Sequence record: NC_005083.2 | Reading direction: 5' to 3' (one strand) | DNA length: 64,000 nucleotides | In this document: in pieces, positions 133 through 57,497 of the stretch | Layout: each line of letters starts with the position of its first letter | How positions within the stretch are numbered: the first letter of the stretch is position 1 | Notes under the pieces: model-generated | Database searches by the model: none | What the model was told of the DNA's origin: nothing | The model's input: only the letters and a program-made list of their open reading frames with translations | Made by a program: the position numbers and the translations under genes

Positions 133-256
133 TGGTGGAGAGTGATGGATTTGAACCACCGACCAAAAGATTTACCTAGTTATTAAGGTTTGCAGCATGA
201 ATGCTTGTCAGTATTCTTTAACATTCTTTTGCTCTACCAGACTGAGCTAACTCTCC
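133..256 (-). ncRNA. tRNA-like RNA 1: intact acceptor, D and T arms and CCA end, with a 54-nt loop replacing the anticodon loop
   Basis: Minus strand: GGAGAGT-TA-GCTC AGTCTGGTA GAGC-A-AAAGA[54 nt]TCTTT-TGGTC-GGTGG TTCAAAT CCATC-ACTCTCC-A-CCA. Confidence 0.85.
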
Positions 257-262
257 ATAATT

Positions 263-380
263 TGAGGGTGAAGTACAGGACTCGAACCTGCGACCTCCGG
301 CGTGCATGTAAATGCAGAATGAAATCTTATCAGACTTCGTTTTTTGAGCCGGCATTCTAACCAACTGAACTAACTTCACC
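263..380 (-). ncRNA. tRNA-like RNA 2: 46-nt loop replacing the anticodon loop, G-1:C73-type acceptor, no encoded CCA
   Basis: Minus strand: G-GTGAAGT-TA-GTTC AGTTGGTTA GAAT-G-CCGGC[46 nt]GCCGG-AGGTC-GCAGG TTCGAGT CCTGT-ACTTCAC-C-CTCA. Confidence 0.85.
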
Positions 381-2402: not shown

Positions 2403-3041
2403 TTAAAATAATTTGTTGATTTGTTCATGTAGTTCTTCAAGAGAACCATTATTGTCTATTTGAATTGCATCTTTGATAAAACCCAATTCAGTATCGCTAA
2501 CGTGATTAGATGCAAGCGAACCTTCTCGGTTAACTTGAAGCATCGTGCCACCAAGCTCTTGTACCAATTCTAATTCGTTTTGAAAACGAACATCAGTGAT
2601 TATAAACACCAAATCCGGGTTTTTAAACACTAGCTCATTGTATTTATTACGTGCGTAATTGATCCAATGTTGATCATCAAGCGAACGTGCAACGTCAGTG
2701 CCAGTCATTTGCAGTAAATCACGAATGCTGAACAGTTTCGTGTGAGGGAGCAACGTGTAGTAGACATAATCATAATCAGCGTCTACATTCGCGTACTCAC
2801 AACAAGTCAAAACAAGTTCAATTGCTTCGTCGAGGGTAAATGTCGGGACTTCTCTATCAAAATTGTTTTGCCCGTCGATGTCTGCATACTCATAGCCATA
2901 TTCTTTCAATCCAATGTACAAACCCTCTTTAATCGGGTCTGCAAACTTGTAAATGTAAGCATTATCACTATGAATATCTTGAATGGCTTGAGCTACAGTA
3001 TCTTTGCCTGAGCGTTTTTGTCCATTTATTCCTATTATCAT
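2403..3041 (-). CDS. 1: Deoxynucleoside monophosphate kinase
   Basis: P-loop GINGQKRSGKDT, IRDLLQMTGTD, ITDVRFQNE, HVSD motifs. Confidence 0.95.
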   Translation of the reverse strand: MIIGINGQKRSGKDTVAQAIQDIHSDNAYIYKFADPIKEGLYIGLKEYGYEYADIDGQNNFDREVPTFTLDEAIELVLTCCEYANVDADYDYVYYTLLPHTKLFSIRDLLQMTGTDVARSLDDQHWINYARNKYNELVFKNPDLVFIITDVRFQNELELVQELGGTMLQVNREGSLASNHVSDTELGFIKDAIQIDNNGSLEELHEQINKLF

Positions 3042-3077: not shown

Positions 3078-3106
3078 ATTATACGACGAAAGTGCTATCT
3101 TCTAAA
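3078..3106 (-). promoter_or_regulatory. Promoter downstream of iteron cassette A, driving gene 1
   Basis: (TG)TTTAGA-17 bp-TATAAT. Confidence 0.6.
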
Positions 3107-3130
3107 CATGCACCAGCCATACTAGTTTCT

Positions 3131-3247
3131 CTAATATTTCTAATATCCCTAACTTCACTAAAACTACTAATACTACTAAGATGATGCCCAATTTTTGGGC
3201 CTCAAATCCAAACCTGCCGCTTCGCTCTAGATTCAGATACAAAAAAA
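3131..3247 (-). repeat. Intergenic cassette copy A: GCGAAGC motif, hairpin and six TTAG units at 9-bp period
   Basis: CTAA at 3131, 3140, 3149, 3158, 3167 and 3176; hairpin GCCCAA-AAA-TTGGGC; homologous to 29135-29245 and 57391-57481. Confidence 0.85.
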
Positions 3248-3261
3248 GCCCCGATAGGGGC
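3241..3261 (-). terminator. Rho-independent terminator after gene 3
   Basis: GCCCC-TATC-GGGGC followed by a T7 tract on the minus strand. Confidence 0.8.
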
Positions 3262-3274
3262 TTATTGCTTGTGT

Positions 3275-8606: not shown

Positions 8607-8672
8607 AAAACGCCTCCTTTCATTTATTTAGTATCGAGTCTAAATACAGATATATTTTAAAGGAGATCTAAC

Positions 8673-29112: not shown

Positions 29113-29140
29113 GGGTGAGATTGATTTCTCACCCTTTTTT
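29113..29140 (+). terminator. Terminator after the gp12 paralogs
   Basis: GGGTGAGA-TTGATT-TCTCACCC followed by a T tract. Confidence 0.85.
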
Positions 29141-29245
29141 GTATGAGCGAAGCGGTAGAAACGGATCGAGGCGGAAAAATTCCGTCTCATCTTAGTAGTA
29201 TTAGTGGTTTTAGTGAAGTTAGAGATATTAGTATGATTAGTATTA
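29135..29245 (+). repeat. Intergenic cassette copy B: GCGAAGC, hairpin and six TTAG units at 9-bp period
   Basis: TTAG at 29192, 29201, 29210, 29219, 29228 and 29237; hairpin GAGGCGGAA-AAA-TTCCGTCTC. Confidence 0.85.
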
Positions 29246-29253
29246 AATACTTG

Positions 29254-29282
29254 TTTAAACCCATGAATGTGCCTGCTATTAT
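29254..29282 (+). promoter_or_regulatory. Promoter downstream of iteron cassette B
   Basis: (TG)TTTAAA-17 bp-TATTAT. Confidence 0.55.
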
Positions 29283-29323
29283 AAACGCATAAAGACATCT
29301 CCCTCCTTGATCCTTTGTATTGC

Positions 29324-29331
29324 TATAAATA
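29324..29331 (+). promoter_or_regulatory. Late promoter (wac)
   Basis: TATAAATA. Confidence 0.85.
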
Positions 29332-29370: not shown

Positions 29371-31050
29371 ATGACAATTCAAAAGCCTATCATTACAGAG
29401 CTTAGATATGTAAATGGTCAACCAGATCCTTCTCAACGTCCCGATCAAACTCGAATTAACTGGGCTAAGAATGGTGAAAGCATCAATGGTGCTTCTGGTG
29501 ACACGGTTTCTGACGGTGTGCTAAACCGCGCAGGAGTACAGATCCAAGAAAACGTTCTGAACACACATTATAATACAAAAGCACAGCAAACGACAATCGA
29601 AGAACTTGTCGATACCGTAAACGAACTGACGGGTGGTGGCGACGCAAACCTTGGTGCTCGTGTTTCTCAGACTGAATTCGATATTGATGTTCTTGAAAAT
29701 CAAGTAGATGATCTTCAAGACAATGTTGGTGTACCGTCTACTATTGATGTTATGGCAACCGGTTTATATCGTCGCGCTGAAGACATCGAAGCTGATATTG
29801 GTGTTCGTAACCCAAATGACATCCCAAATGACGTTGAGAATAATGACACGATTCGTAAAGACTTGTATTTCATCAAACGTCGTATCGGTAACGACCGTAA
29901 CTACGATGTCAACGGGAATTCATCTCCGAGTACAAACCCAACTGGTATGAAATATCAGATTGAAGATTTGTACAACAAAACTGCAACGATCAATGCTGAA
30001 ATTGGTGAAAACACAATCCCGTTGACAATCAATGGTCGTCTGTATGAGTTGGAGCAAAACTCACAAGTTGGTGACGTTGCTGAACTTCGTAGCGAAATCG
30101 GCGATTCTCAAGATGCAGATCCTGCTCGTACGATTTATTTGCGCCTTGACGACGCAGAGAGTGCGATTAGTGACAACTCATCAGACATAAATTTGTTGCA
30201 ACAAGAAATCGAAACTCCAACAACTGGTCTAATTGTTCGCGTTTCGGCTAATGAAACTGCAATTTCAGACGGTCAGACTCAAATCACGGCTAATGCTCAG
30301 TCAATTAATGACATTACAACTGACCTTGGCTCGTACTCAGTAGGTGACGTGTATGCAGGTACGGTTAAAGCTCGTCTATCGACGTTTAACGACGACATTT
30401 CTAATCTATGGAGCCGTTTAGGGGCTACTGACGCAGAGACTGGCACAGTGTCGTACAGAGTGGCAGGATTAGAGGCTAGTCTAGGGGATCGCGATAGTCC
30501 GGTTGAATTCACAGCGTGGTACACTATTCAAGAAAACCGTGGTCTGATTGACTCAGCTCAGTCGGATGTTGATGGTCTATTGACTGTAGTCGGTCAGAGT
30601 GATACTGAAGTGGGTACTTTGCGTGCTCGTGTTCTTGAGCTTGAAGCCAACTTGGATTATGCAATGTTGACTTCAGACACGCCAAACACGGCATCGTTGA
30701 CAACAACACCGACAGACATGTTCAGTTTATTCAACGTTGAATCAGACGTAAGTGGTTTCACATACACAGGTGGTGTTTTGACTAGAACTGGTCTTGGTAT
30801 TAAAAAGCCGATCATGTTGAACTGGGTAGTTGTTTCGCCAACTACAACAACACTTACGATTAAGATTGATATTGTCAATCCGTCTGGTAGTGTTACTATT
30901 GAAAAAACACGTACGCTTCGTGCAGGTGCAGTTACGCCGATCAATATTGTTCACGTTGCTGACATTGAAGACACTGGTGACATTAGTATTCTTGCTAGTA
31001 CTGCGGCAAACGTTACGATTGAACACGAATCGTTCTTCATGCAACTATAA
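29371..31050 (+). CDS. wac: Fibritin (whisker/collar protein) with a non-foldon C-terminal domain
   Basis: LRYVNGQP...RINWAKNGESINGAS...GVLNRAGVQIQEN N-terminus and segmented coiled coil. Confidence 0.92.
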   Translation: MTIQKPIITELRYVNGQPDPSQRPDQTRINWAKNGESINGASGDTVSDGVLNRAGVQIQENVLNTHYNTKAQQTTIEELVDTVNELTGGGDANLGARVSQTEFDIDVLENQVDDLQDNVGVPSTIDVMATGLYRRAEDIEADIGVRNPNDIPNDVENNDTIRKDLYFIKRRIGNDRNYDVNGNSSPSTNPTGMKYQIEDLYNKTATINAEIGENTIPLTINGRLYELEQNSQVGDVAELRSEIGDSQDADPARTIYLRLDDAESAISDNSSDINLLQQEIETPTTGLIVRVSANETAISDGQTQITANAQSINDITTDLGSYSVGDVYAGTVKARLSTFNDDISNLWSRLGATDAETGTVSYRVAGLEASLGDRDSPVEFTAWYTIQENRGLIDSAQSDVDGLLTVVGQSDTEVGTLRARVLELEANLDYAMLTSDTPNTASLTTTPTDMFSLFNVESDVSGFTYTGGVLTRTGLGIKKPIMLNWVVVSPTTTTLTIKIDIVNPSGSVTIEKTRTLRAGAVTPINIVHVADIEDTGDISILASTAANVTIEHESFFMQL

Positions 31051-56920: not shown

Positions 56921-57330
56921 ACTATACCACTCTCAATTTTTCTATTATCAATAATGTGTTTAATTGTGAAGCCCATTTGGCTAATGCCTTTCAAAGCTTC
57001 TTCGATGAAAGATAACACATCTTTCATATGTTGAAAACGTGCAATCGCTAATTGAAGAGCTTCATCACCAGCGAGTGCGTATTTCATTTCACTTTTTTCA
57101 ACGATAAAATCACAAACTTCATCGTCATGCTTGCCGCTATAAAAGAGCCAGCGGTCTTTTCTCACTGCTTCCATTTTCATTTCAGCTTTAATAAGAAGCT
57201 GTCTTGCATCGGCTCTATATGCAAGCCACTTTGCATGAAGTACTGGGATTCGAATGGCTGCTGTTTCTAGTGCAGTCGTATCGATCTTAACGTCTTCATG
57301 GTATTCTGCTTTTAAATCTTGTAACTTCAT
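56917..57330 (-). CDS. uvsY: UvsY recombination mediator
   Basis: LHAKWLAY, RWLFYSGK, GFTIKHIIDNRKIESG; start at 57330 with GAGG RBS. Confidence 0.93.
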   Translation of the reverse strand: MKLQDLKAEYHEDVKIDTTALETAAIRIPVLHAKWLAYRADARQLLIKAEMKMEAVRKDRWLFYSGKHDDEVCDFIVEKSEMKYALAGDEALQLAIARFQHMKDVLSFIEEALKGISQMGFTIKHIIDNRKIESGIV

Positions 57331-57350: not shown

Positions 57351-57379
57351 AGTATACATATCAAACGGGTTTTTGTAAA
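57351..57379 (-). promoter_or_regulatory. Promoter of uvsY, downstream of iteron cassette C
   Basis: (TG)TTTACA-17 bp-TATACT. Confidence 0.75.
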
Positions 57380-57390
57380 CACGAATCTCA

Positions 57391-57481
57391 CTAATATTAC
57401 TAACTTCACTAAAACTACTAATTCTACTAAGATGAGACGGAATTTTTCCGCCTCTTACCTTTTGCTTCGCGTATAAAAAAA
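57391..57481 (-). repeat. Intergenic cassette copy C: GCGAAGC, hairpin and five TTAG units at 9-bp period
   Basis: CTAA at 57391, 57400, 57409, 57418 and 57427; hairpin identical to copy B. Confidence 0.85.
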
Positions 57482-57497
57482 GCCCCGAAGGGCTTTC
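57475..57497 (-). terminator. Terminator after gene 35
   Basis: AGCCC-TTCG-GGGCT followed by a T tract on the minus strand. Confidence 0.85.

What the first reader, a model, noticed from the sequence alone, without database searches (positions are those of the whole stretch)
3078..3261. Dispersed cassette, copy A: terminator - GCGAAGC - hairpin - exact 9-bp TTAG iteron array - promoter (candidate replication origin)
Seen: three copies in the window (3131-3247 minus, 29135-29245 plus, 57391-57481 minus), all in the same order relative to transcription: terminator, ATAC/GCGAAGC, a hairpin with an AAA loop, ATC, then 5-6 units starting TTAG at exactly 9-bp spacing, then a promoter. The copy A hairpin (GCCCAA/TTGGGC) differs from B and C (GCGGAA/TTCCGT) by compensatory changes. 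The array is strongly strand-biased (almost no G on the CTAA strand). Established: T4 origins are transcription (R-loop) primed, and oriE carries iterons bound by RepEB. Inference: these are multiple iteron-type origins or loading sites for a phage initiator or activator.
Basis: partly seen in the sequence, partly recalled or inferred. Interest (0 to 1): 0.78.

Follow-up and report, generated by a model that had tools for sequence, protein, structure and literature searches.

The report
Dispersed hairpin plus 9-bp TTAG arrays
Vibrio phage KVP40 and its relatives carry six evenly spread copies of a hairpin followed by a 9-bp-phased TTAG array, which look like docking sites for an uncharacterised phage protein encoded next to the anti-sigma gene asiA; a Vibrio genomic island has copied both the sites and the protein.

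Summary
The window is the last 64 kb of Vibrio phage KVP40. It holds three of the genome's six cassettes, each with a GCGAAGC motif, a 9-bp-stem hairpin, ATC and 5-7 units of TTAGWRRWW at exact 9-bp spacing. In the window a terminator precedes each cassette and a sigma-70-type promoter follows. All KVP40-like Vibrio phages found carry the cassette; the three genomes read in full have it at the same six loci, more evenly spaced than chance (P about 0.005). Every copy points the same way as local transcription.

Three things are new. The arrays are among the least stable DNA in the window. The copies evolve in concert, with TTAG invariant. The same architecture sits directly upstream of homologues of phage protein KVP40.0294 (phrog_15600) in Vibrio parahaemolyticus-group genomic islands, with TTAG, TTCATT or TTCTTT units. 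In the phages this gene abuts asiA, and these phages lack a recognisable MotA.

Best reading: the arrays are recognition platforms for that protein. The protein would control the adjacent promoters, possibly as the missing MotA analogue, and the sites are the best candidates for transcription-primed origins. Origin function itself is untested. An RNA or single-strand platform and a classical iteron origin remain live rivals.

The parts
3246..3263 (-). Copy A: intrinsic terminator after gene 3 (stem-loop, then a T-run to about 3239)
   Evidence: sequence
3219..3225 (-). Copy A: GCGAAGC motif (within AGAGCGAAGCGG)
3183..3203 (-). Copy A: hairpin GAGGCCCAA-AAA-TTGGGCATC (the CCC/GGG variant), followed by ATC at 3180-3182
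3131..3179 (-). Copy A: six TTAG units at 9-bp spacing (a seventh, degenerate CTAG unit reaches 3122)
   Evidence: 5th least stable 50-mer in the window
3078..3106 (-). Copy A: sigma-70-type promoter TTTAGA-17-TATAAT for gene 1 (dNMP kinase, ATG at 3041)
29113..29140 (+). Copy B: intrinsic terminator after gene 12-2
29147..29153 (+). Copy B: GCGAAGC motif
29168..29188 (+). Copy B: hairpin GAGGCGGAA-AAA-TTCCGTCTC (with a G.T wobble), followed by ATC at 29189-29191
29192..29240 (+). Copy B: six TTAG units at 9-bp spacing
   Evidence: 3rd least stable 50-mer
29254..29282 (+). Copy B: early-type promoter TTTAAA-17-TATTAT. The late-promoter motif TATAAATA follows at 29324-29331, and the wac ATG is at 29372.
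57475..57493 (-). Copy C: short terminator (GCCC-TTCG-GGGC plus T7) after gene 35
   Evidence: sequence
57464..57470 (-). Copy C: GCGAAGC motif
57434..57454 (-). Copy C: hairpin GAGGCGGAA-AAA-TTCCGTCTC, followed by ATC at 57431-57433
57391..57430 (-). Copy C: five TTAG units at 9-bp spacing (a sixth, degenerate TTCG unit reaches 57382)
   Evidence: 8th least stable 50-mer
57351..57379 (-). Copy C: promoter TTTACA-17-TATACT for uvsY (ATG at 57330)

Best explanation
The conserved core (9-bp-stem hairpin, ATC, then 5-7 units of TTAGWRRWW at 9-bp phase) is a cis-acting recognition platform for a lineage-specific phage protein. The most likely partner is the phrog_15600 family member KVP40.0294, whose gene abuts asiA.

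Proposed mechanism:
1. Several protomers load head-to-tail on the phased units. The polarity of the array faces the downstream promoter.
2. Together with AsiA-remodelled RNA polymerase, they keep or switch on the sigma-70-type promoter that lies 9-27 bp beyond the array in five of the six loci (genes uvsY, 1, nrdH, orf0136 and the early-type promoter before wac).
3. This would make the protein the functional counterpart of T4 MotA, which these phages lack.
4. In T4 such activator-dependent promoters are the R-loop origins oriF and oriG. Here the arrays are the most easily melted DNA around. The six evenly spaced sites are therefore also the best candidates for transcription-primed replication origins.

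Shown here: the anatomy, conservation, spacing, strand polarity and low stability of the cassette; the cis-linkage of the same architecture to phrog_15600 genes in Vibrio islands; and the asiA adjacency in phages.

Inferred, not shown: that the protein binds the array, that binding activates transcription, and that replication starts there.
For: Six copies per genome are conserved at the same loci in KVP40, VH7D and 1.081.O. Across 51 Vibrio phage records nearly all have 6 places. Even spacing gives P = 0.006 and 0.004.

TTAG is invariant in 142 of 143 units and positions 6-7 are purines, while the other positions drift. Paralogues within a genome (86%) are more alike than orthologues between distant genomes (80%).

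Promoters follow the array in A-E. The arrays are the 3rd, 5th and 8th least stable 50-mers of the 64-kb window.

In Vibrio islands, homologues of KVP40.0294 (E 1e-25 to phrog_15600) are each preceded on the same strand by GCGAAGCG, a hairpin and a 9-bp array. The unit is TTCATT in L158, L162 and L170, and TTCTTT plus TTAG in L167.

In phages the gene lies directly upstream of asiA: in KVP40 and 1.081.O, and overlapping asiA in a distant phage contig. The family occurs in 52 phage records, all Vibrio KVP40-like, essentially the set that carries cassettes.

Phage D479, with a divergent family member, has a different hairpin-plus-repeat cassette at the same loci.

KVP40 has asiA but no recognisable motA. 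Its AsiA co-activates with T4 MotA, and a functional MotA analogue has been postulated (PMC2988021). T4 oriF is the uvsY promoter (PMC3016281), and copy C sits at the KVP40 uvsY promoter.
Against: - No binding, transcription or replication data exist.
- The distance from the last TTAG to the -35 hexamer varies (13, 15, 17, 28 and 31 bp) with no common helical phase, which is unlike a fixed-geometry activator. This is read directly.
- Copy F has no promoter in any of the three genomes, and its last units overlap the Shine-Dalgarno and start codon of a lipoprotein gene. Copy B of 1.081.O is followed only by a late-promoter motif.
- Hairpin covariation and G.T wobbles that pair only on the sense strand point to a single-stranded form, which a duplex-binding activator does not need.
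- The AF2 model of the protein is confident (pLDDT 82) but has no DNA-binding or any other known fold relative.
- The island variant L154 carries the TTAG cassette but no phrog_15600 gene.
- The AT-rich element lies upstream, not downstream, of the promoter, unlike the T4 oriF/oriG DUE.
Confidence: 0.36

Rival explanations
1. Single-strand platform. The cassette works as RNA (or as the displaced non-template DNA strand). The hairpin nucleates an oligomeric protein, possibly phrog_15600, on an unstructured run of UAG-containing repeats. This follows the logic of TRAP or HutP on (U/G)AG repeats, or of T4 gp32 on its own leader. The effect would be on read-through transcripts: attenuating or insulating transcription that escapes the upstream terminator, or repressing translation where the array overlaps a start site.
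For: - All copies are co-oriented with transcription.
- The hairpin shows double compensatory changes, and its wobbles pair only on the sense strand. The sense strand folds far better than the antisense (-23 against -8.4 kcal/mol for copy C).
- Each array type uses a three-letter alphabet on the sense strand. TTAG arrays have almost no C, the TTCTTT array has no G, and TTCATT arrays have 3-4 G. This keeps a single strand unpaired.
- Copies E and F lack terminators in KVP40 and must be transcribed. F overlaps the ribosome-binding site.
- In the islands the cassette lies in the leader between a promoter-like 37-mer and the gene.
- TRAP and HutP recognition of spaced (U/G)AG triplets is established knowledge, cited from memory.
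Against: - Four of six KVP40 copies, and five of six loci in 1.081.O, sit just after strong intrinsic terminators and before the next promoter. Most transcripts would therefore never contain them.
- No terminator or antiterminator overlaps the array.
- Even genome-wide spacing has no obvious meaning for an RNA operator.
- Array self-folding is not conserved between copies.
- No Rfam family matches.
- Purines at unit positions 6-7 could explain the C depletion equally well for duplex recognition.
Confidence: 0.25
2. Classical iteron origin. The arrays are origins in their own right. The phrog_15600 protein is a replication initiator that melts the AT-rich array and recruits the phage helicase loader, independent of transcription. 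The island versions are rep-plus-iteron replicons, and the TTAG copy in islands lets them fire with the phage initiator.
For: - The island layout is initiator-like: the array lies upstream of the gene, in the region next to a VapE-like primase/helicase gene and a clamp-loader-like AAA gene.
- Island variant L154 has unmistakable iterons of another type beside a replacement gene in the same slot.
- The six sites are evenly spaced and of lowest duplex stability.
- T4 itself uses about five origins, one of them at uvsY and one with 12-nt repeats.
Against: - The units share only TTAG plus purines and each position in the array keeps its own identity, unlike near-identical 17-22 bp iterons.
- The phage gene is coupled to asiA, a transcription factor gene, not to replication genes.
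- There is no helicase, primase or known initiator fold in the protein.
- Strict co-orientation with transcription is not required of an initiator site.
- T4-type phages are not known to use an origin-binding initiator.
Confidence: 0.2
3. Recombination module. The cassette is a PeSL-like promoter/terminator shuffling element, or a homology patch kept alike by gene conversion, with no dedicated binding protein. The island copies are by-products of recombination with infecting phages, or a means for the island to be replicated by recombination-dependent replication.
For: - Copies A-D have the PeSL layout of a terminator stem-loop just upstream of an early promoter (PMC4122927).
- There is concerted evolution, and hairpin variants swap between loci.
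- Island copies are 92-97% identical to different phage variants and are flanked by a duplicated 37-mer, as expected for homologous insertion.
Against: - Neutral homology would not keep TTAG invariant at exact phase while the spacers change.
- It would not keep six syntenic loci across genomes whose cassettes are only about 80% alike.
- It would not reproduce the same architecture with different units upstream of one protein family.
- The described PeSLs lie in hyperplastic regions and include no such array.
Confidence: 0.1

Closest known systems
T4 MotA/AsiA middle promoters, including ori(uvsY)=oriF and ori(34)=oriG
   Same: A phage-specific cis element sits next to sigma-70-type promoters of DNA-metabolism genes embedded among late genes. 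One site is exactly at the uvsY promoter. The phage encodes AsiA. In T4 these promoters double as R-loop origins (PMC2988021, PMC3016281).
   Different: There is no MotA gene and no TGCTT box at -30. The element is a 50-60 bp phased array plus hairpin lying upstream of an intact -35-like hexamer, at variable distance. The AT-rich segment is upstream, not downstream, of the promoter. There are only six sites per 245 kb.
T4 oriE 12-nt direct repeats ('iterons')
   Same: Evenly spaced short direct repeats in a T4-type genome, conserved in close relatives and of unproven function.
   Different: The T4 repeats form a single cluster at one locus with a 12-nt period. Here there are six dispersed copies with a 9-bp period, an attached hairpin and a candidate partner protein. 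No sequence comparison was possible because the primary paper is not held.
PeSL promoter-early stem-loop cassettes of T4-like phages (Arbiol 2010; Comeau 2014)
   Same: A terminator stem-loop is followed by an AT-rich stretch and an early promoter. The elements are repeated in the genome and recombinogenic.
   Different: PeSLs are many, variable and concentrated in hyperplastic regions. The published description has no second hairpin or phased array. The core here also occurs without a terminator or promoter (copies E and F).
Iteron-type plasmid origins (R6K gamma, pSC101, F, P1) and rep-ori modules of phage satellites
   Same: Tandem direct repeats are linked in cis to the gene of a protein of one family. 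In the islands they lie next to replication genes. The region is AT-rich.
   Different: The units are 9 bp with only 4-6 constrained positions, there are no DnaA boxes, and the protein has no known Rep fold. In the phage the sites are dispersed far from the gene.
TRAP and HutP RNA operators; the T4 gene 32 leader (from memory, not tested here)
   Same: Regularly spaced (U/G)AG-type repeats in an unpaired stretch beside a structured nucleation element, read by an oligomeric protein.
   Different: The period is 9 nt rather than 5-7. No overlapping terminator or antiterminator is present. Most phage copies lie between a terminator and the next promoter.
Baculovirus homologous regions (hrs) (from memory)
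   Same: Dispersed, roughly evenly spread repeat clusters that evolve in concert and serve as enhancers and candidate origins.
   Different: The sequences, host domain and proteins are unrelated. This is an analogy only.

Membership tests
Iteron-type replication origin | Tandem direct repeats of constant length | tested here: met
   5-7 units at exactly 9 bp in every copy
Iteron-type replication origin | Repeat units near-identical to one another (each a full binding site, typically 17-22 bp) | tested here: not met
   Only TTAG is invariant. Positions 5-9 vary and each unit position keeps its own identity across copies
Iteron-type replication origin | Cognate initiator protein that binds the repeats | tested here: inconclusive
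   A candidate family (phrog_15600) is linked in cis in islands. There are no binding data and no known Rep fold
Iteron-type replication origin | Supports autonomous or infection-dependent replication | not testable with these tools
   Needs a plasmid replication assay or marker-frequency sequencing
T4-type R-loop origin (oriF/oriG) | Promoter whose transcript primes synthesis | tested here: inconclusive
   Promoter-like sites follow 5 of 6 arrays. Copy F has none. Priming is untested
T4-type R-loop origin (oriF/oriG) | DNA unwinding element downstream of that promoter | tested here: not met
   The low-stability segment is the array itself, which lies upstream of the promoter
PeSL (promoter-early stem-loop) | Terminator stem-loop immediately upstream of an early promoter, SD and ATG | tested here: met
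   True of copies A-D. Not true of E and F in KVP40
PeSL (promoter-early stem-loop) | Located in hyperplastic regions and associated with indels between close relatives | tested here: not met
   The six loci are syntenic in KVP40, VH7D and 1.081.O, and several lie in the conserved core (gene 3/1, 12/wac, 35/uvsY)
Known RNA family (Rfam 15) | Covariance-model match at or near the gathering score | tested here: not met
   Only tRNAs reach gathering score. The permissive scans over copies A and C give terminator-like noise well below each family's gathering score
Transposable element / MITE | Terminal inverted repeats, target-site duplication, variable insertion sites | tested here: not met
   Loci are fixed across the genus. 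The island insertion is flanked by a duplicated 37-mer promoter-like sequence, which is typical of homologous recombination
MotA-box middle promoter | TGCTT-type box centred near -30 replacing the -35 element; motA gene present | tested here: not met
   The promoters keep TTTACA-like -35 hexamers. No recognisable motA exists in KVP40 (PMC2988021)

The most novel reading that the evidence does not exclude
KVP40-type phages use a new sigma-appropriation partner. This would be a beta-rich protein of unknown fold, encoded with asiA, that reads 9-bp-phased arrays at six genome landmarks and thereby fires middle-mode promoters that also serve as the phage's replication origins. Vibrio parahaemolyticus-group defence islands have captured diverged copies of both the protein and its array, and sometimes the phage's own TTAG array. 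They could use these to sense, hijack or jam that step of infection.
Probability: 0.22. Interest if true: 0.88.

Novelty: new variant of a known kind. Interest (0 to 1): 0.72.

Why it matters
Two questions about T4-type phages have been open for years. Which factor replaces MotA in phages that keep AsiA but have no motA (KVP40, nt-1, 65, Aeh1)? And where and how do these large genomes start replication, given that T4 origins share no motif? This cassette gives both questions a concrete handle: six defined sites, a defined unit (TTAGWRRWW) and one named candidate protein (KVP40.0294 and its orthologues).

The island finding adds a second angle. A host mobile element carries the same site architecture and a homologue of the phage protein, next to variable defence cargo. 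That points to a satellite-like or defence mechanism aimed at this step of infection. KVP40-like phages are widely proposed for aquaculture biocontrol, so the elements that decide their early programme, and the host islands that target it, have practical weight.

Tried and rejected
- Rfam at gathering and permissive thresholds on the window and on island loci gave nothing beyond tRNAs and terminator-like noise.
- A generic TTAG-N5 x5 scan of IMG/VR returned mostly unrelated tandem repeats of giant viruses. The stricter pattern found only KVP40 and VH7D plus four unrelated repeats.
- The genome-contig scan with a hairpin-plus-array pattern found one chance coding hit.
- GCGAAGC as a genome-wide signal was rejected. 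Its 60 occurrences are mostly coding and share no context.
- Antisense promoters that could make a CUAA-repeat RNA were not predicted. A Rho rut reading was rejected because regular YC dimers are lacking.
- A coding reading of the 9-nt (3-codon) period was rejected. There is no start codon, and the frame relative to upstream stops is inconsistent.
- A fixed array-to-promoter register was looked for and none was found.
- A search for an equivalent array upstream of uvsY in outgroups was negative for Shewanella phage Thanatos-1. In Aeromonas phage Assk uvsY directly follows another gene.
- Pfam, NCBIfam, PDB sequence and Foldseek searches of phrog_15600 gave no relatives. The first AF2 run with 9 sequences was too poor to use.
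- The plasmid database has nothing like the island region.
- Papers that could have settled prior description were not held: Miller 2003 on KVP40 and Vaiskunaite 1999 on oriE. The phi-pp2 and T4-relatives reviews do not mention repeats. One literature search was uninformative, and one paper that was read (jumbo phage transduction, Pseudomonas) was irrelevant.
Full report
WHAT THE WINDOW IS. A 3-kb probe matches Vibrio phage KVP40 (AY283928.2 / NC_005083.2) at 100% identity. The window is record positions 180835-244834, the last 64 kb. Gene names below are from the RefSeq record.

THE OBSERVATION.
TTAG recurs at exactly 9 bp over 3131-3179 (-), 29192-29240 (+) and 57391-57430 (-).
- A four-unit pattern gives 10 overlapping hits, all in these three places, and none in 100 shuffles. 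The copies pair at 83-86% identity.
- Consensus scans call a terminator and a promoter at A and B, and a promoter at C, all on the strand of the array. The short terminator at C is visible in the sequence.
- Copy A lies between late gene 3 and gene 1 (dNMP kinase). Copy B lies between gene 12-2 and wac. Copy C lies between gene 35 and uvsY.

REFINED ANATOMY. I aligned 24 copies from four phages, one metagenomic phage contig and three island contigs (alignment A3).
- The hairpin has a 9-bp stem, GAGGCGGAA / TTCCGTCTC, around an AAA loop. Of all cells, 88.7% pair, against 36-55% when the partner is slid.
- Two stem positions change on both sides (GC to CG) in three copies. One position alternates G.T with G-C, and another shows T.G. 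These wobbles pair only on the sense strand.
- As RNA the sense strand of copy C folds at -23 kcal/mol (z = -4.2) against -8.4 for the antisense. The array's self-pairing is not consistent between copies.
- Over 143 units the logo is T T A G [T/A] R R [T/A] [A/T]. TTAG is invariant in 142 units. Spacer positions hold 12 C against 154 G out of 715.
- GCGAAGC lies 10-17 nt upstream of the hairpin in four of the six KVP40 copies. Elsewhere in the genome the 7-mer is common in coding DNA and shares no context.

GENOME-WIDE AND GENUS-WIDE.
- I read the rest of KVP40 in pieces. It has exactly six cassettes, at about 35.9, 79.2, 129.7, 184.0, 210.0 and 238.2 kb.
- A motif-blind scan for any 4-mer repeated at 9 bp finds no other array.
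- All six copies point the same way as the local genes.
- The gaps are 43, 50, 54, 26, 28 and 43 kb. For six random points on a circle the chance that the smallest gap is this large is 0.006 (0.004 for phage 1.081.O).
- blastn finds the cassette in 51 phage records, all Vibrio KVP40-like, nearly all with six places.
- VH7D has the same six loci. So does the distant 1.081.O, with locus A duplicated in tandem.

- Copy D (before nrdH) has a terminator and a promoter but no GCGAAGC.
- Copy E starts right at the stop codon of orf0135 with no terminator. Its promoter is 27 bp beyond the array.
- Copy F has neither terminator nor promoter. Its last units supply the Shine-Dalgarno sequence of a lipoprotein gene and abut its start codon. 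This holds in KVP40 and VH7D, and the 1.081.O array likewise abuts the start codon.
- In E and F the GCGAAGC part, where present, is read as the C-terminal codons of the upstream ORF.
- In 1.081.O, copy B is followed only by the late-promoter motif.
- The distance from the last TTAG to the -35 hexamer is 13, 15, 17, 28 and 31 bp, with no common phase (read directly from the sequences).
- The invariant core is therefore hairpin, ATC and array. The flanks of A-D are what Comeau and co-workers call a PeSL, a terminator stem-loop followed by an early promoter. Their description does not include this core.

EVOLUTIONARY BEHAVIOUR.
- Between the close pair KVP40 and VH7D, orthologous copies (92%) are more alike than paralogues (85%).
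- Against 1.081.O, orthologues (80%) are no more alike than non-orthologues (80%), while paralogues within each genome stay at 85-87%.
- The CCC/GGG hairpin variant is at locus A in KVP40 but at A and E in VH7D.
- The copies therefore exchange sequence, or co-evolve with a common partner. TTAG and its phase never move.

PHYSICAL PROPERTY. The arrays are 22-27% G+C in a window that is 43% G+C. They rank 3rd, 5th and 8th among the least stable non-overlapping 50-mers of the window, about 3.5 SD below the mean.

OUTSIDE THE PHAGES.
- A pattern scan of metagenome contigs found the hairpin-array core in non-phage DNA (L149, L150, L151 and L154).
- It is 97% identical to KVP40 copy F over 71 bp. Nothing else in those contigs matches any phage or plasmid record.
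- Looking up the ParA encoded on L151 placed these contigs in an integrated island of about 17 kb in Vibrio parahaemolyticus and its relatives. The island sits at the 3' end of an M32 peptidase gene.
- The island carries, in order: a large serine recombinase, an HTH gene, a clamp-loader-like AAA gene, a VapE-like gene, a 323-382-aa gene on the other strand, an intergenic region of about 0.8-1 kb, parA, and variable defence cargo. The cargo is a Cap4 nuclease set or, in L154, SIR2-STALD, a ThsB-like TIR protein and a PstI-type restriction-modification system.
- The TTAG core is an insert in that intergenic region, flanked by a duplicated 37-nt promoter-like sequence. Sequenced isolates with the same ParA lack it.
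- The three island variants are each closest to different phage variants, which implies repeated exchange.

THE PROTEIN LINK.
- A local tblastn of island ORFs against the phage showed that the 323-aa island protein is homologous to KVP40.0294 (28% identity over 225 aa, E 9e-23) and to its 1.081.O orthologue. Both belong to phrog_15600, of unknown function.
- The leader of that island gene carries AGCGAAGCG, about 12 nt, a hairpin with an AT loop, TC, and then 7-10 units of TTCATTNNN at 9 bp. The related 310-aa gene in L170 has the same arrangement.
- A profile search of 1.8 billion representatives found only 11 members.
- One member, P0025, lies in another defence island. There the gene is preceded by two such cassettes in tandem: one with seven TTCTTTNNN units and one with six TTAG units of the phage type. 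Four 36-bp repeats each holding GCGAAGCG are also present.
- On the sense strand these arrays avoid G, just as the TTAG arrays avoid C.
- In phages the gene lies immediately upstream of asiA in KVP40 and 1.081.O. In a more distant phage contig it overlaps the asiA start.
- tblastn finds the family in 52 phage records, all Vibrio KVP40-like, essentially the same set that carries cassettes.
- With 18 sequences AlphaFold gives a confident beta-rich model (pLDDT 82, pTM 0.77). It has no relative in the PDB or BFVD beyond its own family, and there is no Pfam, NCBIfam or PDB sequence match.
- The annotated KVP40.0294 start is probably 28 codons too early.

A NATURAL VARIANT. Phage D479 has the most divergent phage member of the family and no TTAG cassette detectable by blastn. 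After gene 3, and twice between gene 35 and the nrdH-like gene, it carries its own repeat: a different hairpin, then CTTC, then two or three TTAT/TTAG-like units, then AT-rich DNA. The copies are 96-98% alike. The loci keep a cassette while its sequence changes with the lineage. The rest of D479 was not read.

HOW IT MOST LIKELY WORKS.
- Inference: the core is a recognition platform for the phrog_15600 protein. This rests on cis-linkage in three island types, co-distribution in phages and the D479 contrast. It does not rest on any binding data.
- Established background comes from Hinton's review. KVP40 and nt-1 have asiA but no recognisable motA, KVP40 AsiA co-activates with T4 MotA, and a functional MotA analogue was postulated.
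- A gene coupled to asiA, whose family is tied to arrays that sit just upstream of sigma-70-type promoters of uvsY, gene 1 and nrdH, is the obvious candidate for that analogue.
- In T4 the MotA-dependent uvsY promoter is oriF, and origins otherwise share no motif. The six evenly spaced, easily melted sites are therefore also the best origin candidates.
- I give this combined reading 0.36.
- Its weak points are the variable array-to-promoter distance, the promoterless copy F, and the evidence that the hairpin forms on one strand.
- Those same points feed the main rival, an RNA or displaced-strand platform in the manner of TRAP, HutP or the gene 32 leader (0.25). That rival is weakened in turn because most copies lie behind terminators.
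- A transcription-independent iteron origin (0.20) fits the island layout beside replication genes, but not the unit structure or the asiA coupling.
- A pure recombination module (0.10) does not explain invariant, phased TTAG.

COMPARISON AND NOVELTY. The cassette is not a member of any family I could test. It fails the iteron criterion of near-identical units, the T4 R-loop-origin criterion of a downstream DUE, the PeSL criterion of hyperplastic location, Rfam, and the transposon criteria. It works most like an activator or initiator binding array of the MotA, oriF or hr kind. I found no description of it in the papers held; the original KVP40 genome paper is not held, so earlier mention cannot be excluded. 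I rate it a new variant of a known kind (dispersed protein-binding repeat arrays), with a real chance of being the cis half of a new sigma-appropriation or origin system.

Noticed in passing
L158 1-20930 (also L160-L163, L154, L151); V. parahaemolyticus-group chromosomes: An island of about 17 kb is integrated at the 3' end of an M32 peptidase gene. It carries a large serine recombinase, a clamp-loader-like AAA protein (weakly similar to phage gp44), a VapE-like protein, ParA, a homologue of phage protein phrog_15600 and swappable defence cargo. It looks like a satellite or defence element aimed at KVP40-like phages.
   Followed up: partly
L158 about 8650-8660 (minus strand), L162, L170 about 2856-2863: The T4-type late-promoter motif TATAAATA lies between the 9-bp array and the island's phrog_15600-like gene. 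This hints that the gene is switched on late in a T4-type infection. A chance occurrence in AT-rich DNA is not excluded.
   Followed up: no
L154 3086-3223: At least six copies of an 11-13-nt iteron (CGTAGTTGTATAA type, at 11/22-bp spacing) lie in and just beyond the start of the 382-aa ORF as called (its homology-supported start is 37 codons further in). This gene replaces the phrog_15600 homologue in the island variant that carries the TTAG cassette.
   Followed up: no
L167 3273-3420: Four tandem 36-bp repeats, each containing GCGAAGCG and a short GC-rich hairpin, lie upstream of the two 9-bp arrays. The GCGAAGCG motif may therefore be a separate binding site.
   Followed up: no
KVP40 record 160076-160372 (L007 10076-10372), just after asiA: KVP40.0296 (DUF2829) matches the Pfam family Tad2-like, Thoeris anti-defence 2 (E 9e-26). 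One island variant carries Thoeris-like cargo (SIR2-STALD plus a ThsB-like TIR protein).
   Followed up: no
KVP40 record 158949-159764 (L007 8949-9764): The annotated start of KVP40.0294 is probably 28 codons too far upstream. All orthologues and the PHROG profile begin at residue 29.
   Followed up: partly
window 133-379 (-): Two adjacent tRNA-like genes of 113-124 nt are annotated as pseudo-tRNAs but score well above the Rfam gathering score over the full model. Their length suggests an insertion or intron.
   Followed up: no
L148 7126-7338 (phage 1.081.O, locus A): The whole cassette is duplicated in tandem, with the two copies about 155 bp apart. The second copy has a T.G wobble in the stem.
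   Followed up: partly
L177 4058-4300 and L175 11983-12034 (phage D479): D479 has its own dispersed repeat (a different hairpin, CTTC and 2-3 TTAT/TTAG-like units) at the loci where its relatives have TTAG cassettes. Gene 1 appears to be replaced at locus A.
   Followed up: partly
L005 29376-29903 (KVP40 record about 79376-79903): An ORF of about 175 codons after copy E is not annotated in the RefSeq record. It corresponds to KVP40_0136, cited as the best match of 1.081.O gene 148.
   Followed up: no
window 29254-29331: wac is preceded by both an early-type sigma-70 promoter and, 42 bp further on, the late-promoter motif TATAAATA.
   Followed up: no
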